From assembly GCA_002269645.1 (NCBI GenBank), contig NIVC01001679.1, positions 1 to 64,000 of the forward strand: 64,000 nucleotides of DNA, in the 5' to 3' direction. Numbering within the stretch: position 1 is the first letter of the stretch; every line of letters starts with the position of its first letter. Under the pieces are notes generated by a model that worked only from the letters and a program-made list of their open reading frames with translations, searched no databases and was not told where the DNA came from. The position numbers were made by a program, and so were the translations under genes. Origin of the DNA: Macrostomum lignano (Eukaryota). Below are positions 1,853 to 41,868 of this stretch, in pieces.

Positions 1853-2605
1853 ATCATAGATACGAGAGTCGGGCTTGCGAGACTGAAAATTTTCTGTCTA
1901 TGGTCGACACTCGTTGGCATGGCGGAGTTCAATTTAATCCTGGGGGCATCAATTTGATCATTCTAATCATATAACGTTAGATATCCAGTGCTATAACACA
2001 AGTCGTTTACTTATCATTGAGAAAATCTAAAACAGTACAGTACAATAAACAAATAAAAGCTTTAGCGTCGGATGTCATCAAGTCAGGCTGGAATAAACCT
2101 CAGCATCTGCCGGTATCAGCCTCGCATTTTGCAACTGACCATCAGGCGGAGTGTCCAGCTCTTCTTGCAGTTGTGGTTGAGCCAGCTGGCGTTTGATAGC
2201 TGCCTTCAGGCAGGCGTGCGCGTTTTCCACACGGTTGAGGAATTGCGAGTATGGAGGCAATGTCACCAGGCGCCAAGCGGGCTGAAATTGATCTGGGATT
2301 GTCACTCCATGATGAAAACGGGCGTCATCCATGATCACACAGAGTCCTTGTCATCGGGTACATCACGACTCTTCACGCTTTGCACCAGATCATTGATTAA
2401 CGTCAGGTACCTGACTGTCTCTCCGAAGATCATATGATGAAAAAAACAAGTTAAAAACAGGTTTCGCTAACAGTAAAAATGTGCATTGAAAACATAGAAG
2501 AATCATATTGATGCTCTCAGGATTAGATTGAAATCCGCTATGCCAGCGAGTGTCGACCATCGACAGAGTTTTCAGTCTCGCAGGCCTGATTTCCGTATCT
2601 ATGAT
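1853..2605 (-). mobile_element. Internally deleted Tc1/IS630-like DNA transposon
   Basis: ~115-bp imperfect TIRs (ATCATAGATACG... at 1853 and ...CGTATCTATGAT ending 2605) flanked by TA (1851-52, 2606-07). Minus-strand 2078..2338 encodes IMDDARFH...LPPYSQFLNRVE, the DDE_3 catalytic motifs; it is frameshifted upstream. Confidence 0.85.
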
Positions 2606-3434
2606 TAAATTGAAAGCTTGCAGTACCAACTAGGCCGCAAAAAGGAATAGTTGCTGACAAAGATATTCGCTTGGCTGTTATTCAACCACTAATGACATTT
2701 CTTTGTCAGTGACATCGACTAAATTTAAACCTGTCAGTGACTTTTGTCTGTCTTTAAAATTCGGCTCTCAGTGACCTCAGAGGTATAAACATTAAATTAC
2801 CGAGAGGTAAACATTATGAATGTACTTAAAAAGGCTCAGTCCAGATCGGTGTTACTTCGTATGTTGTCTACATATCTATAGCATTTAACGGAAAGCTTGC
2901 TTATGTGTGCTAAAACAATTCTCTAACTTCCTAAACTTTTATGCTGCGTGTACACAATATCTAAAACATTGCTATAAATTTACATTTAGATAGCTTTATT
3001 TACGAGATCAACTGTTGTCAAAATATAAAAATTTGCCATTGATGTTGATTCACATTTTCATAGAGCTATATTTTCTATTAAGATTGTTATGATGTTTGTC
3101 CTTATTTTGTTCCACTATCCACTTAATTAGGTCCAGATTTGAAGTTAGTATATATAGGTAGATATTCCAAAACAGTGCATTGCTTAGTCTTTATCTCAAG
3201 TGTTCATTAAAGAAGGCACTGCACTGCCCATATACCAGAATCGCAACTGAACCGCTTTAGAAAATGTCACCTAAAGTACTTTGGGAATGGCCTTTCAGGA
3301 ACTTTGAGAAACTTAAGGCACTTAAGGCACCTGAGACTATTATCATAACGTGTATTTCTCTGTTTCATAAATATAATTACTATAATCATTGCATTAATCA
3401 TTTATGATCAATCTCAAGTAACTAATTAAAGAAT

Positions 3435-22093: not shown

Positions 22094-24397
22094 ATGTCTG
22101 GCAAAGACTCCATCCAGCTAGGCAAGATGAAGGTGAACGCCAATCAGAGCGGCTGCTGCGGCGGTAAGGCCAACGAGAACAGCGCCGAAGTGCCCGAGAT
22201 CACGCCGCCGCACATGGTCAAACCGAAAAGTGGCGATAGCGGCATCGACGAGCGGACGAAGGTGCGCAAGGAGAACGAAGACAAGGAGGCCAGGAAGGCC
22301 CGGCTTGCCGGCGGCGCCCTGGCCAAGTCGCTGCTCGATGACTCCAAGGCGGAGCCGCTGCCGCCTAGGATTCGACGACCGGGCGAGACCATCCATCCAA
22401 CTTGGAAGCCGGCGCCGCCGCCACCAAAGATGGCGCCATTGCCACCGCGCGGCGCCAAGTACAACGAAGCATTGGAGCATCATCTTAACCATCTGCCCTT
22501 CTACAACCACAAGCGATACGACCGCGTCGGCATCTTAAAGCGCATCAAGCGAATCAAGCCGCTTCGTGGACTGCTGCAGAACGGTCGTTATTTCATCGAC
22601 AAAGATCGTCGGGCAGATTACGACCCTCGTATGGACCCGCAAGCGTTAGAAAAATACCTCAAGCAGCAAGAGAAAATGGGCCGTCGCTATCGCGCTGAAG
22701 GTCGCGTCAATCGCATCGTGGAGCTCTTTATGGACAAGGTGATGGGCTGGGGCACCTCCCGGGACCTGCTGCCGCCGAAGTCAATCGTCCGTGGCAGTCC
22801 CTACTGCTTTATGTGGCTGGGGCCGCACTTGGCCAGGAAGATGCTGCACCAGCTGTGCGCCCCTCGCGATCCGACTTTGCTGTTCGAGACGATCACCAAA
22901 GAGCCGGAGGACAAAGAGTTTTATATTATCAATCGACTGCCGGTTGACTCGTTTTTCAAGGACAAGGAGAACTTCTACGGAATGCTCTCGCAGTACGTTC
23001 TCAGCCCGAATTTGGTGTGTAAGGCCCGCTCAGTTGATGAGTGCCTCTACCTAGCCAGCTTAAAAGAAGACTGTCAAGACCTGGAGTCGAAGGGGCTTGT
23101 CACGCGCCGTACCTGCGTTCACCAGAATCTGTCGCTCTCGCTGAAGCCGTGCCTCGTGTCCAACTGTCCCAACTATGAGAAGCAAGTCTGCTCGCATCTG
23201 TACGCCTTCATACCGGAGACCATCACATTGAATTCGTACACATCGATGTTACATTTCTCCGAACGCTTCCAACGCGTCGAAGATTTAAAGGGCACCATCT
23301 TTATCACGAAGCCCGCCTACCTATGCAACGGTCGAGGTATCAAGTTCATCGTTGAGCTGGATCAATTTGAACACTTTTTTCACATGCTCGACGGCAAGTC
23401 GACCACTCGTCACGGCGTCGTACTCCAGCGCTACATTGAATGCCCGCGCCTGTTCGACCGTCAGAAGTTCACAATTCGGTTCTTTCTGCTGATCATCGTG
23501 CTGGAGAAGCGCCGAGTTCTTGGCTTCATCCACTACGGCATCGCCATTTTCGCCCGGCTGCCCTACGAGACTGTGGAGCGCGAGGACTTCCTACCCGAAG
23601 AGGAAGCCAAGGAGGGCAAAAAGCCGAACTTGGACATCCCCATCACCAAGCGCTCGATCGGTCGGGTTACTACGGATAAGTTTCCTAGCGAGTCGCACCT
23701 GACCAACTATATGAGCCCGGCTCGCAAGGCCCGCATTAGGCAGGACATTTTCACGGGCCGAGCAAAGATGATGCAGGCCGACAGGGACAATGCATTCTAT
23801 CTGGAGGAAATCCTGCCAAACAAATGCAACAACACCGCGTCAATCTACATCCAGATGCTGTTTGTGGGCCAGTGCATTTTAGACTACATGCAGCCTATTG
23901 TGCAAGACTTTGCCGGCACCTTCCAGACTATCTCCATTGATTCACTGGTCGATGCGCGCAACAAACTCTGGGTACTGGAGGCTGGCACTAACATCTTCTC
24001 GGGACTGCTGACAATCGCGCCCAGGCAGCGCCAGATGATGTCCGCCATCATCCAGGAGTCAGTTGGCATCACCCTGGAGTGCGTGTACAAAACTCGCAAC
24101 AATCTGCCTCTGTACTGGGACTACATGAACGACCGGGAGGACTACGATGCCATCTATTTCTCGCAGGACTTCAACTTGTTCTACGAGACCGAATGGTCCA
24201 GACAGTCTGGCGCGATCTTCGAGCGCCGGCCGCCACCCAAGCACCTGCTGCTGGAGGAGCGCTACGAACAGGTTGACAATCAACGAGCCGCCGCGGCGGA
24301 CAGGCGCGTGTTCAACTTTGAAAAGAAGAAGTCAATCGTTAGGAAGCGCGAGGAGTACATCGCCATGGTCAAAGCCAAGCACGAGGAAGAGTCTTGA
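22094..24397 (+). CDS. Tubulin-tyrosine ligase-like (TTL/TTLL) family protein, single exon, 767 aa
   Basis: ATP-grasp TTL motifs: FIPET, ITKP...GRGI, LQRYIE.P.L..RQKF.IR, SHLTN, FQ..SID.LVD, LWVLE. Several catalytic positions are substituted. Confidence 0.88.
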   Translation: MSGKDSIQLGKMKVNANQSGCCGGKANENSAEVPEITPPHMVKPKSGDSGIDERTKVRKENEDKEARKARLAGGALAKSLLDDSKAEPLPPRIRRPGETIHPTWKPAPPPPKMAPLPPRGAKYNEALEHHLNHLPFYNHKRYDRVGILKRIKRIKPLRGLLQNGRYFIDKDRRADYDPRMDPQALEKYLKQQEKMGRRYRAEGRVNRIVELFMDKVMGWGTSRDLLPPKSIVRGSPYCFMWLGPHLARKMLHQLCAPRDPTLLFETITKEPEDKEFYIINRLPVDSFFKDKENFYGMLSQYVLSPNLVCKARSVDECLYLASLKEDCQDLESKGLVTRRTCVHQNLSLSLKPCLVSNCPNYEKQVCSHLYAFIPETITLNSYTSMLHFSERFQRVEDLKGTIFITKPAYLCNGRGIKFIVELDQFEHFFHMLDGKSTTRHGVVLQRYIECPRLFDRQKFTIRFFLLIIVLEKRRVLGFIHYGIAIFARLPYETVEREDFLPEEEAKEGKKPNLDIPITKRSIGRVTTDKFPSESHLTNYMSPARKARIRQDIFTGRAKMMQADRDNAFYLEEILPNKCNNTASIYIQMLFVGQCILDYMQPIVQDFAGTFQTISIDSLVDARNKLWVLEAGTNIFSGLLTIAPRQRQMMSAIIQESVGITLECVYKTRNNLPLYWDYMNDREDYDAIYFSQDFNLFYETEWSRQSGAIFERRPPPKHLLLEERYEQVDNQRAAAADRRVFNFEKKKSIVRKREEYIAMVKAKHEEES

Positions 24398-26017: not shown

Positions 26018-29000
26018 TCACTTTTCTGCCTCAGCTAAAATTTTGACACTGTGCAGTTGCATTAGCAAATCCAGGTAGACAGCGGAATCGATCCCGGGAC
26101 CTAGTCGGTCGGTCAGCACGCTGATGCCGCATTGACGCATCAGTTCAATGAGTTGAGACGAGTAACTGGCCTGCCGTTCGCTGGTTTCCAAATCTGACAC
26201 CTTGCTGAAGAACTCTCTATTAAACGTTCGATTTTGCATCTTTTTGGCGGCCAAATTTGAGTTGGTAATTCTCGAACCGGCTGGCACAGCGCTGGCATTC
26301 TTCAGCTTGGCACCCTTCGACTTTGCGGCCGATTTGCTTTTAGCTGGCGATGCTTTAGCGGCGTCTTCGGCCTCTTCTTCCCCAATGGTCTCGCCGTTTT
26401 CAGCTGCGGCTTTGGCTCCTTTTGCTCCTTTTGCACCTTTGGCTCCTTTGGCTGCTTTTGCACCTTTCGCACCTTTGGCACTTTTTGCTGGCGCAGCTTC
26501 TGACGCCTCTTCGTCCTCAGCATCTGTCTCCGCATCTGCCACGGCTTTTGCTCCTTTTGCACCTTTCGCACCTTTGGCTCCTTTCGCGCCTTTTGCACCT
26601 TTTGCACCTTTGGCACCTTTTGCTGGTGCAGCTTCTGGTGTCTCCTCTTCCTCATCATCTATCTCTGCATCTTCAGCAGCTTTCCCTCCTTTTGCTCCTT
26701 TTGATCCTTTTGCACCTTTCGCACCCTTCGCACCTTTCACACCTTTGGCTCCTTTTGCACCTTTGGCTGGCGCAGCTTCTGGTGCCTCCTCGTCTTCGAC
26801 ATCTGTCTCCGCATCCTCCACGGCTTTCGCTCCTTTCGCACCTTTGGCTCCCTTGGCTCCTTTTGCACCTTTCGCACCTTTAGCTCCTTTCGCACCTTTT
26901 GCACCTTTGGCTGGCGCAGGTTCTGGTGCCTCCTCGTCTTCGACATCTGTCTCCGCATCCTCCACGGCTTTCGCTCCTTTTGCTCCTTTCGCTCCTTTTG
27001 CACCTTTGACACCTTTTGCGGCTTTCATTCCTTTGGCGCCTTTTGCTGGTGACTTCACTGCTGCAGCTTCTTCGTCCTCCAATTCGGCCTCTGCATCTTC
27101 TGCTTCCGGCGCCGCGCCTTTGGCACCCTTGGCGCTCTTGGCGCCTTTTGCACCTTTCTCGCCTTTAGCACCTTTCGCACCCTTTGCACCTTTGGCGCCT
27201 TTAACTGGCGAAGGCACTTCCACTTCAGCATCCGATTCGAGACCTTCATCTCCGCTCAAATCATCTGCACCGACCGTCTTAGCCGCTTTCATTCCTTTGG
27301 CACCTTTGGCACCTTTTGCACCTTTGGCACCTTTTGAACCCTTTGCACCCTTGGCGCCTTTACCTGGCGAAGGGACTTCCGCTTCAGCATCCGACTCGAG
27401 TCCTTCATCTTCAACCACACCGTCTGTAGTTACGGTTTTAGCCGCTTTCATTCCTTTGCTACCCTTAGCACCTTTGATACCTTTAGCACCTTTGGCACCT
27501 TTTGTTGTTGACATCTTTTCCGTCTGGTCTTCGTCTGCTGCGGCCGCCATCGCCTCCTCCAATACCTTTCCATCTTTGACACCCTTGGCTCCTTTTGCTC
27601 CTTTAGCAGCTTTGCCAGCCTTTGCACCTTTGGCACTTTTCGCCGATTTACCTGTGTCCGCTTCCTCGACTTCCTCAGCCGGCTCTTCTACCCCCTCTGC
27701 AGCTTTAGCACCTTTTGCACCTTTGGCATCTTTGACTGCAACTTTGGCCAGCTTCTTGCCCGCAACCGCTGATGAGTTGAACAGTGGCGCAGCGGCTGTC
27801 GAGCTAGTCTGTACCATCGGCGCCGGAATCGCGGCGCGCTTGGCAAGACCGGTTGACCCTAATTTGGCGGTGGTGGAGGCTGCGCCAAGACCGAACGAGG
27901 TTGATGTGGTCAGGCGACCTGACGCGACCAGAATTTGCTTGCTCAAATAGCCCAGAACGCTTGTGGTCCTCAGCGCCGGGTCCTGCCAGGTGAGGGGTTT
28001 TTAACAATGTTTTTTATTGATGGCAATAAATAGTTGATTACACCTGCCACAATGAGCAGATTTGCAACCGACAAACAGCGCATTTGAAGGCTGTGCAAAG
28101 GCTGTTCAGTCCCATGGACAGCTAATGCTGGCACCCATTTTACGGCTTGGGTGAACTGAAGCAATGCAGAGTTAAGTGTCTTGCTCAAGGACACAAATTG
28201 TTCCGAGTGGGATCGGGGATCGAACCCCCGACTTTCAAGTTGAGTCCGACGCTCTAACCATTAGGCTATCATCCCACTACAATGCTTTTTAGTTTAACTT
28301 AAAACATACGAGCGTAATGCGTACATGTTTTACAAAAATTAAAACTGAGAAACACTCGTTCTTAACCCTAGACTGCATCTTTACACGATTCGTGTGACTT
28401 CATGGCTTATCAATTGACGGCAGTGCAAACGAGCTTTGAGGGTAACTGTCAGTCATGAATCATCTTTGTATTTGTCTTTTACAAATTATAATTTAAATGC
28501 GGTGGAAAATGAAAGTCAAATAAAAAGCTCACTCACATCGATTCCAGTTAACTGCAAGCCGGTCCCATCTGAGCCGGCAGTCAGCAGCTGCTCATTTGCC
28601 CAGCCAATCACGGTAGCGGCTGCCTCGTCCAGCTCGCCGCAGTTCCCTGCCACGCGTCGGTACTGCCTCAGCGAGTGCAGCCGCATCATGCTAATCAGCA
28701 GGTGCAGAATAGCTCGCAAGCCTCCAGCGGCCAGTTGCTCAGCAATGGCCAAGTCCAGCGGTAAGCCGTGCTGCTTGGCGCACTCCACCACAAGCACGCA
28801 GTTGGCCAGATGTTGCTCATCGCTACTGTTTAGTTCTCCTTCATCTGTTCCGGGCGAAGCTGTTGCTGTCACGGCAACACTGGCCCAGTTGACACTGCCC
28901 GGGGAGAGAGCTTCCCAAGCCTAAGCAGAATGAAAGATCTGATTGGTGAAATCAAACTATGCAACCAAGGTAGAACAATATTAGGATAAAAAAGTCACCT

Positions 29001-29925
29001 GTAGCAGTACGAGGCCGTCGCGTAGGTCGTCTGCTAGACGCGACACGGGCGGCTCTACGCCTAACGAATTGATCCAGATTTTGATAGCGGCTGCTTCGTC
29101 AGTTTCCGGGTTGGCCTTGTCCAAGTTTTGTGTCAACTCAGTACCCGTAGGACTCTTAATGCTATTCTCATCTTCAGCAACTGACTTGCGCCACAAGCAT
29201 ACCAGGTAGAAACTGCGCAACAGTCGAGCCCGATGATCCCTAGCAGCTTCCTCGTTCTCTACGTTGTCGCAGTCGTAATTATCTTTTCCATCGAGATGCT
29301 CTGAACTCAACAGACCGTTCAAATCAAGCGACTTCATGATGTCTTCAGTGTCGGCCTCGGGATTCTCTGTAGCGCTGAGAGCAGTGAGACGATGACAGGC
29401 TGACGGCTCGTTGCCTACGTAGCTGTTGCCAAGGTGACCGCGAATCCAGCTGCGAAATTCCATTGCCGATCTCTTATCTGGCAGGTAGCAACGATGCAGC
29501 GCCTGCAACAGGATGGCAATGTAGACGCCACAGTCGGCCCGGTCCAGACATTCAACCGTTAGGCCGCCAACGCTGACGCCGACGGATTCCAACGAGCCGA
29601 TTGCTAAGTTCAGATTTTTGCGCCGCTTCCGAGCTGACAGCTTCGCTTCCGAATAGCTGGCTACCAAGCTCTCGTCCAGAGTCCCAGGCTTGATGACGTT
29701 AGCCAGAGCGCACAGAACCGCCCCGTCTTGTAGTCGGTCGAATAAATTCTTCTCGGACAGCGGCAGATAGTTGACGCCTAGCTTACTACTCTTGGATAGT
29801 AGTCGGTTGAGGTGAGCGCAGATGCAGGCAACGTCGGAGCCAAAACGGTTGCGTACCGACTCCGCGGTGTAGCTTTTCTGTGAAGCTTTCAGCTCCTGCT
29901 GGTAGACTGGGTCCGAAAGCAGATG
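26018..29925 (-). CDS. Divergent plastin/fimbrin-like CH-domain protein; complement(join(26018..27982,28537..28920,28999..29925)); possible first exon 31091..31180
   Basis: CH1 (LFDRLQDGAVLCALANVIKPGTLDE...NLNLAIGS), CH3 (IWINSLGVEPPV..L..DLRDGLVLLQ), CH4 start (VIGWANEQL...DPALRT) and a CH4-like end. All junctions are phase 0 GT-AG, with branch point CTAAC before acceptor 29925. The first exon is less certain. Confidence 0.82.
28033..28272 (-). mobile_element. SINE family A copy in the plastin-like intron
   Basis: Contains GTTAAGTGTCTTGCTCAAGGACAC and GATCGAACCCC (B-box, reverse strand). Confidence 0.85.
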
Positions 29926-30060
29926 CTGCAATGTTAGCGATGATTTGAGAAACGGTCAAGACTTCTTCACAGGTTTATTTGAGTGTTTAGTTTCCCTCGT
30001 GATCCAATCGGTGTTGGCTAGCTGACGGAAAACAAAGACAGGCAGTTCTAGCTGACAGGG

Positions 30061-30290
30061 GGTCGTAGCCTATAGCGGTCAGGCTCAATTCCAAATGCAG
30101 TCACATTGGAATCTCAACTATTAACGCCCTTGAAGGTCAAACCCCAAAAGCACAGGGAAGTGTACATGCCTAACGAGTGTGTGCCTGTGTGCGTATGACT
30201 GTGTACGTATCTGCTTGTGTGCCCGCTCAGGGGAGTCGGCGGAATGGGCAGAATAAAGCCTCTCGTCTTAGAGGTCACTTGAAGTTTTGC
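30061..30290 (+). mobile_element. SINE family B copy (internally deleted)
   Basis: GGGTCGTAGCCTA head followed by AAGTGTACATGCCTAACGA...GGAGTCGGCGGAATGGGCAG. Confidence 0.75.
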
Positions 30291-31399
30291 ATACAAAGTA
30301 CCAGCTGCACTGGACACCAACATGCACATCCCTGACAAAAATTCTTGAGCTTATATGCATGATTTTTACTCTGTTTTCTATCTGTACTGTGCGGTAAAAC
30401 TCATACTAAAGAGGCATTGTAATACAGTACAATCGACGAGAATCATTGATTAAAGAATCTGTTGCAACCCGTTATTTCGTAGTCCTCAGTGCTGGCCTCT
30501 AAGCTACATGAGAACGCGCTCCAAACTCCATTTTTGTGCAACAGAAGTATTGGACTTCTTGAACAAATTTAGCTTATACCAAAAGCCTTTTTGAAACCCA
30601 CACTTCAAGCGTCATTTTTATGGGCAAGAATTTATCTACCTAATCTAAAATGGGTCTGGATGCCTTGACGAATGCCTTGACGAAACCAATCCCCTTGACG
30701 AATCTCCCCACCAAAAACCCACAATTCCGCACGCCCCTGTGGTTGGCTCTAAATGTAAGCTACATATACCTTAAGGTAGTTGGGTTGAAGCTACATAAAA
30801 ATGAAGCTTAAATCTAAAATCAGCACCACAAAAAACCTCTATAGGGACATAATTATTTTCCTATAAAAACTGCAACTATGTACTAAAGTTCAAGAAGTCC
30901 GAAGTATTGGAACTATTTTAGCATGCCCCGGACATCTGATCGGTTGAAATCCGTACCTACCAACTCCTACTAATTCCGAGACATTATGTACTACCATTAC
31001 CAACCACACCAGCTTCACTACTCTTAGTCTTTCAAATTCTTAATCTTATACAACCCACAATCGCAATCCAGAAGACCATGCAGCGCTCACCCAAGCTCCT
31101 TGTCGAAAAGCTCCGTGTTCAGACATCAGTCGGCAGCCATTGTGCAGCTCATTGGGGAAGTTTGGTCGCCTTGCTTCCATGTTTGTTTGGTCAACCGCCA
31201 GGCTTCCAACAAACTGAGGGAGCTCTGCAGATTATTTGCTATGCTTCTTGGTTGTGAATTTCAAAGCCTACTAGCCCACTTCAGGGCCCACTTTCTGTGC
31301 CTTTGATTTGACTTAATCGCCATAGACAACAGTGGGGTTACTGATTTTGAGTTTTCAAATTTTGTTATTGAGATTTCAATTCCTATAGGCCAGTTGCCG

Positions 31400-32920: not shown

Positions 32921-35900
32921 ATGTTTTCCAGGAAAGTCCGGTTTGAATTTCTCTTCAACTACTTCTGGCTGCTCCTGACTGCGGCTGCAATTGCTCAAGC
33001 GAACTCGTGTGGAAAATTGGCCTCGGGTCAGGTGGATCGATCCTGTTACAGTCCCCAAGGTGCACAGCTCGACAACTTCAAGTATAATAGTTGCTTGGCT
33101 GGCGCCAGACAGCGACATCAAAGGGTACCACTACATTGTAACCTGCCCCAGGTGCCCCTCTCCGAAAGTTAACACTACAGATGAGACATATACATTTCGG
33201 GGTCTCAGAGCGGCTACTGAGTACAGCTTCTCCATTCAGGCTGGACTTCCAAACTGTAGGCTGAGTTCTGCAATCAATCGTTCTGGAAGGACACGTGAGA
33301 AAGAGACTCGTTTTGCTTTGATATTGAATTTTACGTCTGTAGCTCGAAGTTTATATTCATTCAAATTCTAGGGGATGCCGTGACTAAATATATATATTGA
33401 TTACTAATTTACTACTTAATTTCCTATAGGTTTCGTGGTTTACTGTGTAGCATAAAGTATTGCTGAAGTTTTTAGTTGTAGCACAATATTTCAAAACCAT
33501 CTTGCATAAAAACTACCAGCTGTCACATATCTCAGCTGTCATTTTTTGGGGACACTTTTAGCAAGTTTCGAAAATCGCACTTCAGAAGAATTGTCCATTC
33601 GTCGAAGATGAATTGAAGATTACGCTTGTCAATGGACACTGTCGACATTGTTAATGTTACATTACTTTGTGGGCTCTTCTTAACCTATATGAGCCTTGAT
33701 TTCCGTGCCAATCTCTATTTTTTGTTTAAATGTATTCTTTAAGATATCCGTATGTCTAACCGGGTATTAGGGCATAAATTGCAGGGCTCTCTGGCATTGA
33801 CGCCAGCTCAGCTCAGTACAGCTCCAATGAGACCGCCATCTCTGTGACTTGGCAGCCATCCAGCACTTCTGGCGTCTCGTACCAGCTCACCTGCAAGCGA
33901 GTCGGCTCAGGTGAAGTCTCGACTGTGTCTTCACCCACTCCGAATGCCACCTGCGGCTCCCTGCAGTCTGGACAGGCCTATGAGCTGCGGGTGGCTGTGC
34001 AGAAGGCGGGATTTAATGACGTCATCACGCGTCTGTCCAACCAGCTGACCAGTGAGTTCTCAGTTGCTGCTGGCCGTAGATCTGCCTCCTACCGGCATGT
34101 AGTTTTTTTAATCATAACAATTGATTACACCTGCACCAATCGGCCAGATGTGCAACCGACAGCTCAGCCGCAGCTAGTGCGCGGCGCATCTGAAGGCTGC
34201 GTACGGCTGTTCAGTCCAAGGACTGGGGGGTCGCCACACACACCCTCAATTACCCCAGCTAATGCTGGCACCCATTTAACAGCTGGGTGAACTGAAGCAA
34301 TGCAGAGTTAAGTGTCTTGCTCAAGGACACAAATTGTTCCAGTGGGATCGGGAATCGAACCCCCGACCTTTCAGTCGTGAGTCCGTCAATCTAACCACCA
34401 CTAGGCTAGAGTTTTTAGAAAATATAGAAAACTTTATGTCACTTTTAGAATATAAAAATCTGAAATGGACACGAGTCATCCATATTCATTTTCAACTTGA
34501 ATTATTTTTCGAAGACAATTTGACCGCTACTTGAAGTACTATATTATAAAGATGTCGCTTACTCAAAAGTAGCAAGAAATGGGTTTGAAGTTAATTCCTC
34601 ACAATGCGTACAAACGTTTGCAATCTGATATTGCGTCCTCAGGTGAGGTTATAACTCAGCAGTGTGAAGACCCGTTGACAAAAATTAAGAGCTCAAAAAA
34701 ATAATTTTGACCTTTCGTAAATTCAAATTACTTTTAGGCCCACCAAAGAGCTTACAGATGTGGTATAAAGTTCTCTGTTGAAACGAACCAGAAACGATTA
34801 AAGAATTTGTTCGAATTTGCTTGTCGGTGTAAAGTAATTACTCAACAAAGATGACTGGTTTTATAATCAGGAAATTTCATCTCATTGGCTGAATCAGCTG
34901 CCCACCCACCTCGCAACCGCAGAGCTCTTTCCGATTGACGCCAGCTCAGTGAGTTTCACCATCACAGAGACTTCCATCCATCTGACTTGGGCGGCGTCCA
35001 TCACTGAAGGAGTTCTGTACCGGGTGACCTGCAGGCGAGTCGGCACAGGGAATTCAACATCTCTGCCTCCATCAAAGTATCTGAGTGCCACCTTCAGCAG
35101 TCTGCAGTCAGGAGAGGCCTACAACCTGAGTGTGGCTGTGACTAAGCAGGGCGGATTCCATGAAGTTGTCACCTGGCTGCCAATCCAGCTGACCAGTGAG
35201 TTGGAGCTCAGCAAATGATTGCAGCTGCTCTCATGAGGCACAGCTCGCTTCTATTGGGTCCGTTTCATTGCAGAGTTGTTCGGAATTGACGCCAGCTCAG
35301 CTCAGTACAGCTCCAATGAGACCGCCATCTCTGTGACTTGGCAGCCATCCAGCACTTCTGGCGTCTCGTACCAGCTCACCTGCAAGCGAGTCGGCTCAGG
35401 TGAAGTCTCGACCGCGTCTTCACCCACTCCGTCTGCCACCTGCGGCTCCCTGCAGTCTGGACAGGAATATGAGCTGCGGGTGGCTGTGCAGAAGGCGGGC
35501 GGCTTTGATGACGTCATCACGTGTCTGTCCAATCAGCTGACCAGTGAGTCTTGCTTTCGTCCTGCTTTTGTCACGGCTTGTTCTCAAATCAGTCCTGAAG
35601 GCGTTCACATTTTATAAGACATATTTTATGCAAGTGTTAGCCCAAAACCGATTTGTCTTTGTCATATTTATCCAACCGTATCTCATGTATCTTTTATTGC
35701 CTACATTATCTGTTTAATTTTCAACTGTAACTTGATGATGCTGTATGTTTTACTAATTGTCCCTTCATTGATTGATATAAGGGTAGATCCCTAGCATCCG
35801 TCTGACAAGGACCACTTGAAGTTGTCGTTGTACTGGAACTTAACTTTTAATTTTTTTACCTTTAGATTGTAAAGGTAATTAGATTGTAGGCCTTTTAGTT

Positions 35901-38900
35901 TCAATAGATGGAATGGCAGCGAAGATTCTGCACTGCGTTGCGCGTGTATTTATATGATTATAACAAACAGTGCGAGATTGAGGGGCCAAGGGAGGTGCGA
36001 AAAGGTGGCGTGGCGCGATTGGCTACGCCAACCCCCCGGCTTAGCGAGCCGGCTAGCTTGGCGCGCACCCACCCCACCTCAGCTAGACAGAGGCGGGTGG
36101 GGGTTTCCAGTGCGGCTGCACTGGTGCTGCCGGTCGCGTAGTCTGGCTGCCACAGCACCCTATTTTCACTGAATGATCTCTGCGAGATTTCTGATATGCA
36201 ACGCCAACTTCTAGTGGTCCTTGGCCCTAATGATGAGAAAGTCCATGTTCCTGTGCACCCTGTGCAAGCGTGTGGCTTTATGTCCGTGTCAGTGGAATGG
36301 GCTTGGCTTGCTTGCTTGCTTGACTGAAGGAACTCGCACCTCACCATTTCCCTCGCACCTGCCAACCGCCGCAGAGCTGTACTCAGTGAACCCCAGCTCG
36401 GTCAGCTACTCAGCCAACGAGTCGGCCATCATCGTGACAATTTAGTGTATGTAGATTAGTACTGCCCGACCCCCTCTGGTGGTAAGGGGCCTAATGAAGT
36501 CTCAAACAAATTATTTTTTACTCAGTCAGTTTTTCACGAGTAAAATGATAAAATTTTTGTGTAAAACGAAGAAAAGTTCTTCCTTAGGCATCTCAGGATG
36601 TGTCCATTGAGTCTCTGGCATCTCAGCATGTGTCCATTGAGTCTCTGGCATCTCAGCATGTGTCCATTGAGTCTCTGGCATCTCAGCATGTGTCCATTGA
36701 GTCTCTGGCATCTCAGCATGTGTCCATTGAGTCTCTGGCATCTCAGCATGTGTCCATTGAGTCTCTGGCATCTCAGCATGTGTCCATTGAGTCTCTGGCA
36801 TCTCAGCATGTGTCCATTGAGTCTCTGGAATCTCAGCATGTGTCCATTGAGTCTCTGGCATCTCAGCATGTGTCCATTGAGTCTCTGGCATCTCAGCATG
36901 TGTCCATTGAGTCTCTGGCATCTCAGCATGTGTCCATTGAGTCTCTGGCATCTCAGCATGTGTCCATTGAGTCTCTGGCATCTCAGCATGTGTCCATTGA
37001 ATCTCTGGCATCTCAGCATGAGTCCATTGAGTCTCTGGCATCTCAGCATGTGTCCATTGAATCTCTGGCATCTCAGCATGTGTCCATTGAGTCTCTGGCA
37101 TCTCAGCATGTGTCCATTGAGTCTCTGGCATCTCAGCATGTGTCCATTGAGTCTCTGGCATCTCAGCATGTGTCCATTGAGTCTCTGGCATCTCAGCATG
37201 TGTCCATTGAGTCTCTGGCATCTCAGCATGTGTCCATTGAGTCTCTGGCATCTCAGCATGTGTCCATTGAGTCTCTGGCATCTCAGCATGTGTCCATTGA
37301 ATCTCTGGCATCTCAGCATGAGTCCATTGAGTCTCTGGCATCTCAGCATGTGTCCATTGAATCTCTGGCATCTCAGCATGTGTCCATTGAGTCTCTGGCA
37401 TCTCAGCATGTGTCCATTGAGTCTCTGGCATCTCAGCATGTGTCCATTGAGTCTCTGGCATCTCAGCATGTGTCCATTGAATCTCTGGCATCTCAGCATG
37501 AGTCCATTGAGTCTCTGGCATCTCAGCATGTGTCCATTGAATCTCTGGCATCTCAGCATGTGTCCATTGAGTCTCTGGCATCTCAGCTGCATGTGTCCAT
37601 TGAGTCTCTGGCATCTCAGCTGCATGTGTCCATTGAATCTCTGGCATCTCAGCATGTGTCCATTGAGTCTCTGGCATCTCAGCATATGTCCATTGAGTCT
37701 CTGGGATCCCAGTATGTGTCCATTGAGTCTCTGGCATCTCAGCATGTGTCCATTGAGCCTCTGGGATCCCAGTATGTGTCCATTGAGTCTCTGGCATCTC
37801 AGCATTTTTTTAAGTTGTGAAAAAAAGCAATAATTAGCACATAGGAGAGAGAAAAAGATTTTTCAAAAACGAATTTCGTACCGTTGGTATCATTTAAACT
37901 TTTGTTTTTGTATTTATTGGTTTAAAGACACACAAAAAAGTGTTGGATATTGCTGCGATTGATGGGGCACTTTGGCGCGGAGTCCCCACCGTGGCTTTTT
38001 CGCGTTCTGTACGAGTATGTAAACTGGCCTGCACAATCTTGAAAATATGGAATATTCCAGCTTTATAGATTTTTTTATCATTTTTCCTGTGTAATAACCA
38101 AAGAAACAGTTGGTAACATAAGAAGCACAATGAAAGTTTGATAGTTGACAGTGTCACTCAGCTCAGTGTCACTCAGCTCACAGTGTCACTCAGCTCACAG
38201 TGTCACTCAGCTCACAGTGTCACTCAGCTCACAGTGTCACTCAGCTCACAGTGTCACTCAGCTCACAGTGTCACTCAGCTCACAGTGTCACTCAGCTCAC
38301 AGTGTCACTCAGCTCACAGTGTCACTCAGCTCACAGTGTCACTCAGCTCACGGTGTCACTCAGCTCACGGTGTCACTCAGCTCACAGTGTCACTCAGCTC
38401 ACAGTGTCACTCAGCTCACAGTGTCACTCAGCTCACAGTGTCACTCAGCTCAGTGTCACTCAGCTTAATCTCAATCCCCATCACCCCGCCCTTCTCAGGG
38501 CCGCTGCTCATCGCGGACCCCGCCAGCCGACCCTCAGCCGCTGCCGCGGTGTCGCAGCCGAGCGAGTCGCAGCCCGCCGAGGCGGTGCTGCTGCTCAACT
38601 GGACGTCCAGCGCTGCCGAGGGCGCCGACCTGCTGCAGTTCCGCGTGAGCAGCGCCTCGAAGCCCGACTTGCTGAGGGAGGCTGCGTTCAACTCGATGAG
38701 GCTGCTGCTGAGCCTGGCGGAGGCGGAGCTGCTCTCGCTGAAGCTGACGGTGGCGGTGGCTGCCGTGGCGAACAAATCCGGGCTGAGGCAGGAGGGCTCG
38801 GAGATCGTCATCGCTGAGCAGCTGCAGATGCGTGAGTTCAGCTCAGAGTCTTTGTTGTGAGTGGGTCTTGGTTCTGAGTGAGTCTTGGTTCTGAGTGAGT

Positions 38901-41868
38901 CTTTGTTGTGAGTGAGTCTTGGTTCTGAGTGAGTGTTGGTTCTGAGTGAGTCTTGGTTTTGAGTGAATGTTGGTTCTGAGCGAGTCTTGGTTCTGAGTGA
39001 GTCTTGGTTCTGAGTGAGTCTTGGTTCTGAGTGAGTCTTGGTTCTGAGTCAGTCTTGGTTCTGAGTGAGTCTTGGTTCTGAGTGAGTTTTGGTTCTGAGT
39101 GAGTCTTGGTTCTGAGTGAGTCTTGGTTCTGAGCCCGGTTTCCCCGCCGCCGTCCCGCAGCGCCCGGCCGCCCTTCGGTGTCGCTGCTGCCGGACAGGCG
39201 CGCCGTCGAGGTGTCGCTTACTGCCAGCTCCGGCTCCGAGCTGCTGACGGCGGCCGCCCACGCAGACAGCGGGGACTTCGCTGCTACCAACAGCTGCCGC
39301 CCGGACTCCGGCAGGTGCACCGTGGCTCTGCAGCCGCTGAGGCCGTTCACCAACTACTTGGTGGAGGCGGTCGCCGAGCTGTCTGGCCTGGCCTCGCTGC
39401 CCCAGAGGTCGGAGGTTCGAACGCTGGAGGACGCGCCGTCGCAGCCGCAGTCGGTGAGGCTGGACGATGCGTCATCGCAGTTGCTATGCGACTGGCGGGC
39501 TCCCAGCGAGCCGAACGGCGTCATCCGCAACTACTCGGTGGCCTGGGGCTCGCTGAGCTTCCCGGACGGCGCTGAGATTCGCGTCGGAGCCAAGGAGGCG
39601 GCGGCTGACACGACGCGCCTGCCGCTGGAGCCGCCGCCGCTGCCGGGACACGTCGGCTTCTGCCGCGTCAGCGCCTGCACGGGCGGCGGCTGCTGCCGCG
39701 GCAGCGACAGGGCGGAGCGGCGGCTGCCCGACGGCGAGGCGTCCGCGGTGTCCGGCGGCCTGCAGTCGCTGGCGGTCCCTGGCGGTCCCGTCCGCCTCAG
39801 CTGGAAGCCGCTCAGCCCCGAGCTCGGCCGGGGCGTCGTGTTCGAGTTCGAGCTGCGACTAAACGGTCCGGGCGGCTGCGCGGCGGCCCGGCGGCTGAAC
39901 TGCTCCGACTGCGGCCGCCACCGCCTCCAGCTGCAGTCGGAGGAGGCCCGGCAGCGGCTCGAGGCCCTGACGGCCGACTGCTCAGCGCCGGTGTTCGTGC
40001 GAGCCTTCGAGTTCGGCGACGCCTCGCTGTCCGCGGAGGTCGCCGTCAGCTCCGAGGGCGCCTCGCCGAACTCGCTGCTGCCCTGGACCGAGTACGGCGC
40101 CTCCCTGTGGCCGGTGAACCTAGCGGGGCCCGGCGCCGCCGCCTCCGCCTCCTTCCGCAGCCCGGAGACCCGCAGCTGCGCCGTCGGCAGCCTGCGGGCG
40201 ACGCCTTCGGAGGCGGAGGCGCTGGTGGAGTTCAAGGAGCCGCGGCTGCCAAACGGCCTGCTGCAGGCCTTCGCTGTGCAGGTGAGAGTCTTCTACCTGA
40301 GCTTTTGTCATCCTGAAGAAAAATTTCAATTCTCGCACCAGCCTCTACCTTTGGTTTAATTCCATTATTTTGGGTCTTGAGCACGAAAATTGGCTTGCAA
40401 TTTAAACCCATGATGGCCAAAAGCCAAGGCAAGGGCCGCTGTACACACTGTGTGTGCCTGTGCGTATCACTGCGTGCACATCCGCGCCCTTGTGTGCCTG
40501 CTCAGTGTGGGTGGAAACGGCGGATTGGGCAGTAATGCCTCTCGCCGGTTGTGTGACAATGCCACTTAAAGTGCGGCAGTTGCACAGAGCCCTTTTAAAA
40601 AATAATAAATAACAAACCAGAGCAGTTTTAGATTGTGCGGAAGTGCATTTTTGTGTACACATGCACTTATGTCTATTTACTGTCATGCGTGCAACTAGCT
40701 AACGCATTCCGCGCTATACCGCAGGTGTTCAGGATGTCTTCCGATGCCTGCTCTCAGCTTCTGGTTCTGAACTCCACAACTGCCGGCTGTCAGCTGCCTC
40801 TGTGCTCCACCTCCGGTCTTCTGTTTGGACTCTCGCAGGGTTGCGCCAGCACTCAGTACGTCAGCAACATTGCAGGAAACGGTTCGGCTAACAAGTACGC
40901 CGTCAGAGTGTGGCGGCTGCAGCCGGGCACCGAGTACTCGGTGAAGGTAACGCCAATCAGTCAGACTTTGGCCGGAGCTGCAGCTCAGCTCAAATTCGTC
41001 ACTGCCGGCGGTGGTAACCTAGCGACCATCGTGGTAGCGTCCGTGGTCACGACCTTAGCCGTTTTGATCATCGCGGCTATCGTTGCGCTCGTAGTTTTCA
41101 GACATAAAAAACGGACTGACAGGTGAGGCGTAGTGAGTAGTTGATTGTTTTGTTTTCTGCTTAACAATCACTATTGACAGAATAATTTGATCCTATGAAG
41201 ATACGATCGAGCTAAATCATACTGGAAGGGCCAACTGCACTTCATGGGATCACTTCTTGTTCTAGGCTTTTCACTTGAACTTCTGTCTTCATTAATTCGA
41301 TTGCCTGCCCTCTCTTTATTTTCTATCCTTATCTCGCTTTTGATAGGCTCTTAGAGTTCTTATCACTGTCGCAGTCGCGCTCACTCTGTCTCTCTTGCCC
41401 CCTGTACATTCGTTTTATTTTACCCAACCCTGAAGTGTACAGTAAAATTAATTCAGACTGCTTTCTAAGAATGGCAAAAAAGAACTCCTGGCCACTTTGT
41501 CCAATCACGCACACGTCACGCACACGTCTACAAAAAATCCCTATTTCATCTCATTATTCCTCTGATTATAACATTTAATTTAGTTGCTTTATATTGTGCA
41601 GTACGTTTAATTTAGGCCGCACACTGTGACACTACTATAAACACTTGTGTGCAAACGCCATAACTTTGCCTATAGCAACGAGACTTCTGAGCCAACAATA
41701 TCATCTAACAGCGCCTCAGTAAGCAACCGAAGCAGCGTCAATGACTACGCCACTGTGTCAGAAACTGCATGCGCTATGACGACGGCTCAAGCCTCTGACG
41801 ACTACGTGCAGATCGGTGCTTCAGGTGGTCTGAGGATGCAGTTCAGCAATCAGGGCTACTTGCTATAA
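32921..41868 (+). CDS. Type-I membrane protein with ~9 FN3 repeats and a short Tyr-containing tail; exons 32921..33294 (frame break ~33030), 33785..34051, 34923..35195, 35274..35543, [36375..36445 truncated], 38499..38831, 39161..40281, 40725..41122, 41676..41868
   Basis: Signal peptide (FWLLLTAAAIAQA). FN3 motifs (VAW...L.AATEY.F; VTW...LQSGQAYEL; W.APSEPNGVIRNYSV; LQPGTEYSVKV). TM segment IVVASVVTTLAVLIIAAIVALVVF followed by RHKKR. The single-FN3 exons are phase 1. No PTP domain is present. Confidence 0.82.
34110..34409 (-). mobile_element. Near-intact SINE family A copy in FN3 gene intron 2
   Basis: The reverse complement starts TAGCCTAGTGGTGGTTAG...GGTTCGATTCCCG, then the core, then the 3' tail region. 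Confidence 0.88.
36590..37805. repeat. 30-bp minisatellite (CATGTGTCCATTGAGTCTCTGGCATCTCAG), ~40 copies
   Basis: Highly homogeneous array. The ~420-aa ORFs in four frames are artefacts of a stop-free 30-bp unit. Confidence 0.97.
38150..38463. repeat. 17-bp minisatellite (GTGTCACTCAGCTCACA) just upstream of acceptor 38498
   Basis: About 18 copies. Confidence 0.93.
38850..39132. repeat. 18-bp minisatellite (TTGGTTCTGAGTGAGTCT) filling intron 38832..39160
   Basis: About 15 copies, most containing GTGAGT. Confidence 0.93.
40432..40590 (+). mobile_element. SINE family B 3' fragment
   Basis: AGGGCCGCTGTACAC...GGGCAGTAATGCCTCTCGCCGGTTGTGTG...CTTAAAGTGC matches 44097-44240. Confidence 0.8.

What the first reader, a model, noticed from the sequence alone, without database searches (positions are those of the whole stretch)
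26400..27730. Plastin/fimbrin-like protein with a ~440-aa (Gly-Ala-Lys)n / acidic polyampholyte inserted inside CH4
The CH4-like domain starts (GWANEQL...DPALRT..LGYL), is interrupted by ~550 aa, and finishes at the C-terminus (ERQ...LIELMRQCGISV...LLMQL). The insert alternates runs of up to ~9 GAK triplets with acidic spacers (AVEDAETDVEDEEAPEAAPA). Synonymous positions vary widely between triplets, which suggests constraint on the peptide rather than pure DNA slippage. Gly-X-Y periodicity could permit short collagen-like trimers, while the charge blocks suggest a neurofilament-like spacer brush or condensate former. I recognise no plastin with this architecture. It may define a specialised cytoskeletal bundler, for example for sperm bristles or an adhesive organ (inference).
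Basis: partly seen in the sequence, partly recalled or inferred. Interest (0 to 1): 0.75.

Follow-up and report, generated by a model that had tools for sequence, protein, structure and literature searches.

The report
Plastin-like gene with giant charged loop
A flatworm (Macrostomum lignano) gene encodes a divergent actin-bundler-like protein whose last folded domain is split by a roughly 590-residue disordered loop made of ten alternating lysine-rich (Gly-Ala-Lys)n and acidic blocks; this is an unusual variant of a well-known protein family, and its function is untested.

Summary
The window is Macrostomum lignano contig NIVC01001679.1. On the minus strand, a 4-exon gene (31180..26018) encodes a fimbrin/plastin-like core.

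- **Repeat:** its last exon carries ten modules of [(X-X-K)8-10 basic tract plus an acidic spacer of 16-23 aa]. There are 56 exact GAK triplets, and the block is about 476 aa with a net charge near zero.
- **Coding evidence:** the frame is kept throughout. Third codon positions vary far more than first and second. Module-to-module pN/pS is 0.13-0.44 in this frame. The RNA-seq-based GenBank model (1073 aa) cannot be reached without most of the insert.
- **Host fold:** with the insert removed, AlphaFold2 gives pLDDT 84, and the model matches the four-CH fimbrin core (PDB 1pxy). The C-terminal ~65 aa are modelled with high confidence as part of that core. With the insert included, it is predicted to be disordered.
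- **Family context:** the protein is not unique in kind. M. lignano paralogs (Mlig006537) and one transcript of unknown species share the EF-hand-less core and carry 74-116-aa charged inserts at the same CH4 loop. Canonical plastins have 9-14 aa there.
- **Interpretation:** a collagen-like reading is disfavoured. Function (an electrostatic sidearm or crosslinker on actin) is inferred only.

This is a new variant of a known kind, of moderate interest.

The parts
31091..31180 (-). Exon 1. ATG at 31180; encodes MEARRPNFPNELHNGCRLMSEHGAFRQGAW, followed by a GTGAGC donor. There is no EF-hand.
   Evidence: The annotated gene starts at 31180, and the sequence was read. The NFPxELxNG motif matches the N-termini of relatives P0005 and P0006. 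Pfam finds no EF-hand.
28999..29925 (-). Exon 2 (309 aa). Contains CH1, a shortened and divergent CH2 region, the CH2-CH3 linker and the start of CH3 (AAAIKIWINSLGVEPP...LVLLQ).
   Evidence: Pfam CH and PDB fimbrin hits are. The deletions in CH2 relative to paralogs are seen in the alignment.
28537..28920 (-). Exon 3 (128 aa). Contains the rest of CH3 and the first CH4 helix (VIGWANEQLL...LQLTGID), ending at a GTGAGT donor in phase 0.
   Evidence: aligned to fimbrin 1pxy residues 278-428.
26018..27982 (-). Exon 4 (654 aa plus stop). Contains the CH4 N-half remainder, the disordered loop and the CH4 C-half.
   Evidence: The AG acceptor at 27984/27983 is in phase with exon 3. The intron position is the same in the paralogs of L003.
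27911..27982 (-). CH4 segment DPALRTTSVLGYLSKQILVASGRL (second CH4 helix region), immediately before the loop.
   Evidence: It aligns with DPxLKxT..LGYFGERILV of the paralogs and with FRDPSL...L of plastins. pLDDT is 83-92.
27734..27910 (-). Ala/Ser/Thr-rich proximal linker of the loop (TTSTSFGLGAASTTAKLG...KKLAKVAV).
   Evidence: pLDDT is below 50 in the full-length model.
26306..27733 (-). Block polyampholyte of 476 aa. It has ten basic (X-X-K)8-10 tracts (+8 to +10 each) alternating with acidic spacers (-5 to -10). Modules are 45, 48 or 53 aa. Four modules begin with S-P-x-K.
   Evidence: AlphaFold2 gives pLDDT 30-46 and no secondary structure.
26222..26305 (-). Distal linker of the loop (LKNASAVPAGSRITNSNLAAKKMQNRTF).
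   Evidence: pLDDT is below 50.
26018..26221 (-). C-terminal 67 aa plus stop (NREFFSKVSDLETSERQASYSSQLIELMRQCGISVLTDRLGPGIDSAVYLDLLMQLHSVKILAEAEK). This is the C-terminal half of CH4.
   Evidence: The segment is conserved in the subfamily: 40% identity to P0005, and 45% between P0005 and P0006. hhalign places it on the CH4 helix 'NAKYAISIARKLGA' with E 0.0075 but low probability. pLDDT is 88-96 without the insert and 86-91 with it.

Best explanation
The locus is a transcribed, protein-coding gene of Macrostomum lignano. It encodes a divergent, EF-hand-less member of the fimbrin/plastin superfamily.

**Subfamily trait.** It belongs to a small subfamily seen so far only in M. lignano and in one transcript of unknown species. 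In this subfamily, the surface loop of CH4 between the second major helix and the 'AKYAIS'-type helix carries a charged, disordered insert.

**Amplification.** In this paralog, one basic-plus-acidic module has been amplified by tandem duplication. There are two generations of units, of 159 nt and 144 nt. The result is ten modules, about 476 aa of near-neutral, strongly blocky polyampholyte, inside a 586-aa loop. The loop is translated and kept under purifying selection on the peptide.

**Mechanism (inferred, not shown).** The folded core docks on F-actin mainly through CH3, as in plastins. CH4, which in T-plastin does not touch actin, presents the loop outward as a long flexible sidearm. I commit to the following as the most likely mechanism:
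- The lysine tracts bind polyanionic surfaces (F-actin itself, or the acidic spacers of neighbouring molecules).
- The acidic spacers keep the chain soluble and self-neutralised.
- This gives multivalent, salt-sensitive electrostatic crosslinking that supplements a weakened ABD1, whose CH2 is eroded.

Because the loop emerges next to the CH4 helix that in T-plastin contacts CH1 for auto-inhibition, it may also tune release of ABD1. The four S-P-x-K sites could make this phospho-regulated.
For: **Shown by tool results**
- Organism and annotated gene: 26018..31180, 1073 aa. The GenBank annotation is RNA-seq/StringTie-based (PMC5730564).
- The exons outside the insert sum to only about 645 aa, so most of the insert must lie in the annotated CDS.
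- The frame is continuous from CH4 through the loop to the conserved C-terminus.
- Third codon positions dominate the variation.
- Module-to-module pN/pS is 0.13-0.44 in the gene frame. It is above 1 in four other frames.
- Fimbrin/plastin similarity is supported by sequence and by predicted fold: pLDDT 84, pTM 0.85, Foldseek 1pxy E 2e-12 over about 540 columns.
- In the full-length model the loop is disordered while the core and the C-terminal helices stay confident.
- Relatives have 74-116-aa charged inserts at the same site and the same C-terminal motif. The intron position is conserved.
- Of 157 plastin-like proteins tested with a canonical CH4 HMM, 125 have a contiguous CH4 and none of these has more than 30 extra residues. 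One distant protein (P0153) has a 62-aa loop there, so the site is permissive.
- Kappa is 0.40 against 0.16 in shuffles, and modules are individually near neutral.

**From the literature**
[quoted passage not shown] CH4 contacts CH1 in the auto-inhibited state, and CH4 R594A increases bundling (PMC9478642).

**Inference only**
- Actin binding by this protein.
- The electrostatic crosslinking role.
- Phospho-regulation.
Against: - No RNA reads, cDNA, peptide or expression data for this gene could be inspected.
- The annotated product is 48 aa (one 144-nt unit) shorter than my model, and I could not reproduce it.
- By sequence alone, the C-terminal CH4 half is only weakly similar to canonical CH4. 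hhalign probability is 5%, and neither the Pfam CH model nor a canonical CH4 HMM detects it.
- The AlphaFold2 alignment was dominated by canonical plastins, which biases the model towards that fold.
- CH2 is 30-55 aa shorter than in relatives and the EF-hands are absent. The protein may therefore not bundle actin at all.
- The low pN/pS could reflect only selection to keep the loop soluble and stop-free, rather than a specific function.
- The antisense frame that shares wobble positions also shows pN/pS below 1 (0.28-0.54).
Confidence: 0.6

Rival explanations
1. Entropic spacer or brush. The loop does not bind anything specific. Like neurofilament M/H sidearms, it acts as a long-range repulsive or space-filling bristle that sets the spacing between actin bundles or keeps other structures away.
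For: The loop is long (586 aa) and predicted to be disordered. It has a high fraction of charged residues (0.38) and S-P-x-K / K-S-P-like sites. CH4 points away from actin in T-plastin.
Against: The modules are individually near neutral and strongly charge-segregated (kappa 0.40). From general polyampholyte physics (my own knowledge), this favours collapse or self-association rather than an extended repulsive brush. Neurofilament tails carry a large net negative charge after phosphorylation, whereas this loop has a net charge of about +12.
Confidence: 0.2
2. Tolerated runaway expansion. A minisatellite-prone genome amplified a module in a permissive surface loop. Selection only keeps the loop open-reading, hydrophilic and non-toxic, and the loop adds no function of its own.
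For: - The genome is very rich in tandem repeats: 15% of the genome (PMC5730564), with many arrays in this window.
- The loop length at this site varies widely among relatives, from 74 to 116 aa.
- There is a possible one-unit (144-nt) length difference between the annotation and my exon model built from the assembly sequence.
Against: Modules are old (pS 0.48-0.73, near saturation) yet keep both the X-X-K periodicity and the acidic spacers, with pN/pS as low as 0.13. The charge balance per module is preserved across two module generations.
Confidence: 0.13
3. The repeat is not translated. It would be intronic or UTR satellite DNA that happens to be open in frame, and the real protein would end before it or skip it.
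For: Many non-coding repeats in this window give ORFs of more than 400 aa in several frames. The opposite strand of this repeat is also open for 582 aa. No transcript data could be examined directly.
Against: - The frame links two conserved halves of one domain.
- All module lengths are multiples of 3, including the non-repetitive spacers.
- The codon-position pattern and pN/pS favour this frame.
- The 1073-aa RNA-seq-based annotation cannot be reached without at least about 330 aa of the insert.
- Paralog protein PAA62695.1 and the uninterrupted P0005 contig (no intron in its 2019-nt CDS, so probably a transcript) carry their inserts in the CDS.
Confidence: 0.05
4. Collagen-like triple helices. 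The Gly-X-Y tracts trimerise, making the protein a trimeric crosslinker.
For: The Pfam Collagen model scores 61 bits (cut-off 27.2) in 8 stretches. The tracts have a strict three-residue periodicity.
Against: - Tracts are only 8-10 triplets long and are interrupted by non-Gly-X-Y spacers.
- There are no prolines within the tracts, and glycine is replaced in about 15-20% of triplets.
- Each chain segment carries +8 to +10 charge.
- By eye, the 30-aa N-terminus is not hydrophobic and does not look like a signal peptide (no predictor was run), so prolyl hydroxylation is unlikely.
- No trimerisation domain was found.
- AlphaFold2 assigns no structure.
- The Pfam hit is explained by periodicity and composition.
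Confidence: 0.02

Closest known systems
Plastins/fimbrins (human PLS1-3/LCP1, yeast Sac6/Fim1, Arabidopsis FIM1; PDB 1pxy, 1rt8, 7r94, 7sx8)
   Same: The order of tandem CH domains is the same. These are the best sequence hits in the PDB (E 3e-22 to 2e-14). The predicted fold superposes on the four-CH crosslinking core (TM 0.59/0.65). CH3 motifs such as WxNSLG and DGxxLLQ are conserved.
   Different: - No EF-hand headpiece.
- CH2 is shortened and not detected by Pfam.
- Identity is only about 20-25%. Only 318 of 1.84 billion representative proteins reach E<=1e-3.
- The CH4 loop is 586 aa instead of 9-14 aa.
- The CH4 C-terminal motif is SRLGPxxDxAVY instead of LPEDIVEVxPKM.
M. lignano paralogs Mlig006537 (PAA62695.1 / PAA72374.1, 693 aa), a tandem 640-aa neighbour on NIVC01001909.1, UniRef A0A1I8ITM3/ITX9, and Logan transcript P0005 (SRR30276804, species unknown)
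   Same: They share the EF-hand-less architecture, the N-terminal NF(P)xxL/INGxT motif, the same intron immediately before 'DPxL', a charged disordered insert at the same CH4 loop, and the same C-terminal motif.
   Different: They are only 28-35% identical to the window protein. Their inserts are 74-116 aa, essentially one K/P/A-rich stretch followed by one D/E-rich stretch, with no GAK periodicity and no tandem modules. Their CH2 is intact.
Alternating basic/acidic disordered regions: neurofilament M/H tails, Nopp140 and nucleolin N-terminal regions, MAP1B KKEE repeats (comparison from my own knowledge)
   Same: They are long, low-complexity, lysine-rich stretches alternating with acidic stretches. 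They carry K-S-P / S-P-x-K type sites and act as sidearms or multivalent electrostatic binders.
   Different: There is no sequence homology. The repeat query found no hit at E<=1e-3. The acidic blocks here are Asp/Glu/Ala-rich rather than phosphoserine-rich. Here the region is a loop inside a folded domain rather than a terminal tail.
Histone H1 C-terminal domain / SPKK-type sperm basic proteins (from my own knowledge)
   Same: Ala/Lys-rich basic tracts introduced by S/T-P-x-K.
   Different: Here there is a glycine in every third position, regular acidic interruptions, a net charge near zero, and a cytoskeletal host protein.
Collagen triple-helix repeat (PF01391)
   Same: Gly-X-Y periodicity, and the Pfam model is formally exceeded.
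   Different: The tracts are short, have no Pro/Hyp, show no apparent signal peptide by eye and no trimerisation domain, and are predicted to be disordered.

Membership tests
Plastin/fimbrin | Four tandem CH domains forming two actin-binding domains (CH1-CH2 and CH3-CH4) | tested here: inconclusive
   CH1 and CH3 pass Pfam. The whole-core AlphaFold2 model matches 1pxy/1rt8 over about 540 columns. CH2 is 30-55 aa short, is missed by Pfam, and has pLDDT 45-84. CH4 is recognised only through the family alignment, a weak hhalign hit and the model.
Plastin/fimbrin | N-terminal EF-hand (calmodulin-like) headpiece | tested here: not met
   Pfam gives no EF-hand hit in the window protein, P0005 or P0006. 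The control plastin P0004 gives five EF-hand families. The N-terminus before CH1 is only about 50 aa. EF-hands are degenerate or absent in some accepted fimbrins (my own knowledge), so this feature is not strictly disqualifying.
Plastin/fimbrin | Closest relatives by sequence are plastins/fimbrins | tested here: met
   All six PDB phmmer hits are fimbrins or plastins. The HMMER search of 1.84e9 representatives returns plastin-like proteins.
Plastin/fimbrin | Binds and bundles F-actin | not testable with these tools
   This needs co-sedimentation or TIRF assays.
Macrostomum EF-hand-less, split-CH4 plastin-like subfamily (defined here) | A charged insert of at least 70 aa in the CH4 loop, the C-terminal motif S/DRLGPxxDxAVYxxLLxxL, and an intron just before 'DPxL' | tested here: met
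Collagen / collagen-like proteins | Long uninterrupted Gly-X-Y runs rich in Pro/Hyp | tested here: not met
   The longest run is 9-10 triplets. There is no Pro inside the tracts, and the first triplet position is non-Gly in about 15-20% of triplets.
Collagen / collagen-like proteins | Secretory signal and a trimerisation domain | tested here: not met
   By eye, the N-terminus MEARRPNFPNELHNGCRLMSEHGAFRQGAW is not hydrophobic; no signal-peptide predictor was run. The only Pfam domains found are CH.
Neurofilament-type sidearm (works-like comparison only) | An intermediate-filament rod domain with a C-terminal KSP-repeat tail | tested here: not met
   There is no IF rod (Pfam). The region is an internal loop, and only four S-P-x-K sites are present. 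The resemblance is functional at most.

The most novel reading that the evidence does not exclude
The CH4 loop is a self-complementary block polyampholyte that turns a plastin-like core into a one-component, coacervating actin crosslinker. Intermolecular zippering of (GAK)n tracts with acidic spacers, and with the acidic F-actin surface, would replace the eroded ABD1 as the second valence. This would give a salt- and phosphorylation-tunable mode of actin gelation or bundling not described for any CH-domain protein.
Probability: 0.15. Interest if true: 0.7.

Novelty: new variant of a known kind. Interest (0 to 1): 0.42.

Why it matters
Plastins/fimbrins are among the most architecturally conservative actin crosslinkers (EF-hands plus four CH domains). 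Two things are new here:
- A lineage-specific subfamily has dropped the calcium-sensing headpiece and opened a CH4 surface loop to charged disordered inserts.
- One paralog has amplified that insert to about 590 residues.

This shows that the CH fold tolerates a domain-sized disordered loop at a defined site. It also offers a natural experiment on how charge-patterned disordered regions modify a cytoskeletal crosslinker. The loop emerges beside the CH4 helix implicated in plastin auto-inhibition, so it could also bear on how ABD1 release is regulated.

The practical value is modest until expression site and activity are known. M. lignano has RNAi, in situ hybridisation and transgenesis, so the question is directly testable.

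Tried and rejected
- **The search for homologous proteins** with the core, with a 4-sequence family profile and with the repeat modules. It returned only a few distant plant or protist CH proteins, or nothing. It did not even return P0006. I did not rely on it.
- **Recovering the annotated 1073-aa protein.**
  - Exact look-ups of an alternative-acceptor model (29781) and of my 1121-aa model were both absent.
  - Thirteen possible 144-nt GT-AG 'introns' inside the repeat and five in exon 2 were enumerated but not tested.
- **RNA genes.** ARAGORN and Rfam at gathering threshold found no RNA genes. One sub-threshold tRNA-like element lies in intron 3.
- **Literature** on M. lignano plastin or CH proteins, Mlig006537 and SRR30276804: nothing relevant. 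The species of the P0005 transcript is therefore unknown.
- **Detecting the C-terminal CH4 half.** The canonical CH4 HMM and Pfam CH both failed on the window protein. Support rests on the subfamily alignment, a weak hhalign match and the AlphaFold2 models.
- **Rejected readings:** a collagen-like reading and coding on the opposite strand, for the reasons given under the rival explanations.
Full report
**Source and gene model.**
The neighbouring single-exon TTLL gene (22094..24397) is found verbatim on contig NIVC01001679.1 of assembly GCA_002269645.1, at the same coordinates as in the window. I recognise that assembly as Macrostomum lignano, and the paralog on another contig of the same assembly is named M. 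lignano in GenBank. The same record annotates a minus-strand gene at 26018..31180 with a 1073-aa product. According to the genome paper, this annotation derives from genome-guided RNA-seq assembly (StringTie/TACO plus a mapped de novo transcriptome) with TransDecoder ORFs (PMC5730564).

Reading the minus strand, I obtain four exons with GT/AG borders, all in phase 0:
- 31180..31091 (ATG; 30 aa)
- 29925..28999 (309 aa)
- 28920..28537 (128 aa)
- 27982..26018 (654 aa plus stop)

My model gives 1121 aa. The annotation is exactly 48 aa (144 nt, one repeat period) shorter, and I could not reproduce it.

**The observation.**
The last exon contains ten (X-X-K)n tracts of 8-10 triplets between 27739 and 26411. 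They hold 89 triplets, 56 of them exact GAK, and the longest perfect run is nine. The tracts alternate with acidic spacers of 16-23 aa. Tandem Repeats Finder sees the 9-nt unit and two higher-order periods: 144 nt (4.3 copies) and 159 nt (2.3 copies). These correspond to 48-aa and 53-aa protein modules. The block is 476 aa (A129, K97, G82, E58, D27, no Arg; net +12). Each basic tract carries +8 to +10 and each spacer -5 to -10. The charge-patterning parameter kappa is 0.40, against 0.16 +/- 0.02 for shuffles. The strand is minus.

**Is it coding?**
This genome is full of minisatellites that give long spurious ORFs in several frames, and the opposite strand of this repeat is itself open for 582 aa. 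An open frame alone therefore proves nothing. The positive evidence is as follows.
- The frame runs without interruption from the conserved N-terminal part of CH4, through every module and non-repetitive spacer, into the conserved C-terminal segment.
- The 56 GAK triplets use 16 different 9-mers. Third-position entropy is 1.5 and 1.9 bits for Gly and Ala codons, against 0.5-0.9 bits at positions 1 and 2.
- Between modules, pS is 0.48-0.73 while pN is 0.07-0.30 (Nei-Gojobori dN/dS 0.08-0.21). pN/pS is lowest in the gene frame (0.13-0.44), above 1 in four frames, and 0.28-0.54 in the antisense frame that shares wobble positions.
- Exons outside the insert sum to about 645 aa, and intron 1 has no minus-strand ORF above 74 aa. 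A 1073-aa RNA-seq-based product must therefore include at least about 330 aa of the insert.
- Relatives carry their inserts within annotated or transcript CDS (see the subfamily section below).

**The host protein.**
Pfam finds CH domains (E 8e-21) at CH1 and CH3 only. All PDB sequence hits are fimbrins or plastins: 1pxy 2.9e-22, 1rt8, plastin-3 7r94, and ABD2 entries. The alignment runs through CH3 into the first part of CH4, up to '...DDPALR'.

An exhaustive HMMER search of 1.84 billion representatives gives only 318 hits at E<=1e-3, so the protein is very divergent. With the loop deleted (533 aa) and an 86-sequence alignment, AlphaFold2 gives mean pLDDT 84.2 and pTM 0.85. The last ~65 residues score pLDDT 88-96. 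Foldseek puts the fimbrin actin-crosslinking cores first: 1pxy E 2e-12, TM 0.59/0.65 over 547 columns, then 1rt8 and T-plastin 7sx8.

In the full-length model (1121 aa), residues 498-1045 have pLDDT 30-49 and essentially no secondary structure. The core and the C-terminal helices stay at 86-95.

By sequence alone, the C-terminal half of CH4 is weak. A profile of the C-terminal fragment aligns to the correct CH4 helix (NAKYAISIARKLGA) with E 0.0075 but only 5% probability. A canonical CH4 HMM does not detect it. The AlphaFold2 alignment is dominated by canonical plastins, which is a bias to bear in mind.

The protein has no EF-hands. Its CH2 lacks about 30-55 residues relative to paralogs and canonical plastins.

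**A subfamily, not a singleton.**
The two best hits are P0005 and P0006.
- P0005 (672 aa) comes from a 2155-nt contig with an uninterrupted CDS, from Logan run SRR30276804. The species is unknown.
- P0006 (693 aa) is M. lignano PAA62695.1, Mlig006537.
- The Mlig006537 locus holds two tandem copies, of 640 and 693 aa.

All share the following features:
- an EF-hand-less N-terminus with an NF(P)xxL/INGxT motif, which matches my exon 1;
- a conserved intron immediately before 'DPxL';
- a C-terminal motif S/DRLGPxxDxAVYxxLLxxL;
- a non-alignable charged insert at the same point of CH4.

Measured between the same anchors, the loop lengths are:

| Protein | CH4 loop (aa) |
|---|---|
| Canonical plastins | 9-14 |
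| Distant protein P0153 | 62 |
| Subfamily members | 74-116 |
| Window protein | 586 |

In the M. lignano paralogs, most clearly P0006, the insert is one K/P/A-rich basic stretch followed by one D/E-rich stretch; the P0005 insert is mainly basic. The simplest history is tenfold tandem amplification of such a module in this gene. Among 157 plastin-like proteins tested, 125 have a contiguous canonical CH4, and none of these has more than 30 extra residues.

**What the loop is not.**
The Pfam Collagen hit (61 bits) reflects periodicity. The tracts are at most 10 triplets long, contain no proline, and have non-Gly in about 15-20% of first positions. Each carries +8 to +10 per chain. By eye, the N-terminus is not hydrophobic and does not look like a signal peptide (no predictor was run). 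AlphaFold2 gives no structure. From general knowledge of triple-helix stability, short imino-acid-free polycationic tracts in a cytosolic protein should not trimerise. A search with three and a half modules found no similar protein at E<=1e-3, although that tool performed poorly for this locus throughout.

**How it most likely works (inference).**
[quoted passage not shown] CH4 packs on CH1 in the auto-inhibited state, and mutating R594 in CH4 increases bundling (PMC9478642). From my own reading of the T-plastin sequence, I place R594 on the CH4 'AKYAIS...R' helix. On that placement, the loop here emerges about 10-20 residues before the equivalent helix (LIELMRQCG).

I therefore expect the core to sit on F-actin through CH3, with the 586-aa loop projecting outward. 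Given its blocky, self-neutralising charge pattern, the most likely role is multivalent electrostatic association: lysine tracts with F-actin's acidic surface, or with acidic spacers of neighbouring molecules. This would add crosslinking valence to a protein whose ABD1 looks weakened, and could modulate the CH4-CH1 contact. Four S-P-x-K sites are candidate regulatory phosphosites.

My estimates are about 0.9 for the architecture, 0.85 for translation of the insert, and 0.3 for this specific mechanism. The rivals are a neurofilament-like entropic spacer, a merely tolerated expansion, non-translation, and collagen-like trimers. They are listed with their tests.

**Novelty.**
The gene is annotated only as a hypothetical or CH-domain protein, and I found no literature on it or its paralogs. 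The kind of protein (fimbrin/plastin-like, CH-domain) is known. The EF-hand-less split-CH4 subfamily, and especially the amplified (GAK)n/acidic loop, are, as far as these searches show, undescribed. I rate it a new variant of a known kind, of moderate interest.

**Limits.**
- No expression data, transcript reads or peptides were available.
- The window's own protein is hidden from the databases.
- The species of P0005 is unknown.
- No model coordinates were available to measure loop geometry.
- The 48-aa discrepancy with the annotation is unresolved.

Noticed in passing
window 28208-28275 (-), inside intron 3 of the gene: A tRNA-like element. The Rfam tRNA model scores 21.7 bits (gathering cut-off 29), and ARAGORN finds nothing. 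It is probably a tRNA-derived SINE or pseudogene.
   Followed up: partly
window 26018-31180 (-): The GenBank product (1073 aa) is exactly 48 aa (144 nt, one repeat period) shorter than my 4-exon model. Possible causes are a spurious or real 144-nt 'intron' in the repeat, a copy-number difference between transcripts and the assembly, or an alternative acceptor at 29781. The alternative-acceptor version is not in the protein collection.
   Followed up: partly
window 29400-29560 (-), CH2 region of exon 2: The CH2 domain is eroded. It is about 30-55 aa shorter than in paralogs and canonical plastins, is missed by Pfam, and has pLDDT 45-84. ABD1 may not be functional.
   Followed up: partly
L003 (NIVC01001909.1:71008-87539), 2443-5227 and 6001-10532 (+): Two tandem paralogs (640 and 693 aa) of the EF-hand-less plastin-like gene are followed by an MFS_1 transporter gene. 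The window also has an MFS gene upstream (about 16.6-20.4 kb). The last intron of the 693-aa paralog is itself filled with a tandem repeat that is open in several frames.
   Followed up: no
window 13.5-13.9, 17.3-18.1, 31.26-32.14, 36.5-37.8, 38.1-38.5, 45.9-46.5, 50.5-52.5, 58.6-59.4, 60.1-61.2 and 62.2-62.8 kb: There are numerous minisatellite arrays, e.g. a 30-nt unit at 36.5-37.8 kb that is open for more than 400 aa in four frames. They produce long spurious ORFs and strong GC/AT skews. This is a general caution for ORF-based reading of this genome.
   Followed up: no
window 22094-24397 (+): A single-exon 767-aa tubulin-tyrosine-ligase-like gene (PF03133) lies tail-to-tail with the plastin-like gene, about 1.6 kb apart.
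   Followed up: no
window 32990-40360 (+): A string of short plus-strand ORFs has repeated, fibronectin-III-like-looking segments (e.g. 'SVTWQPSSTSGVSYQLTCKRVGSGEV...'). They suggest a multi-exon gene for a large repeat-domain surface protein. This is an impression by eye and was not tested.
   Followed up: no
window 26306-27733 (-): Four of the ten modules begin with S-P-x-K (SPGK, SPVK, SPAK, SPAK), a CDK/SPKK-type motif. The others have A-P-A-K at the same place.
   Followed up: no
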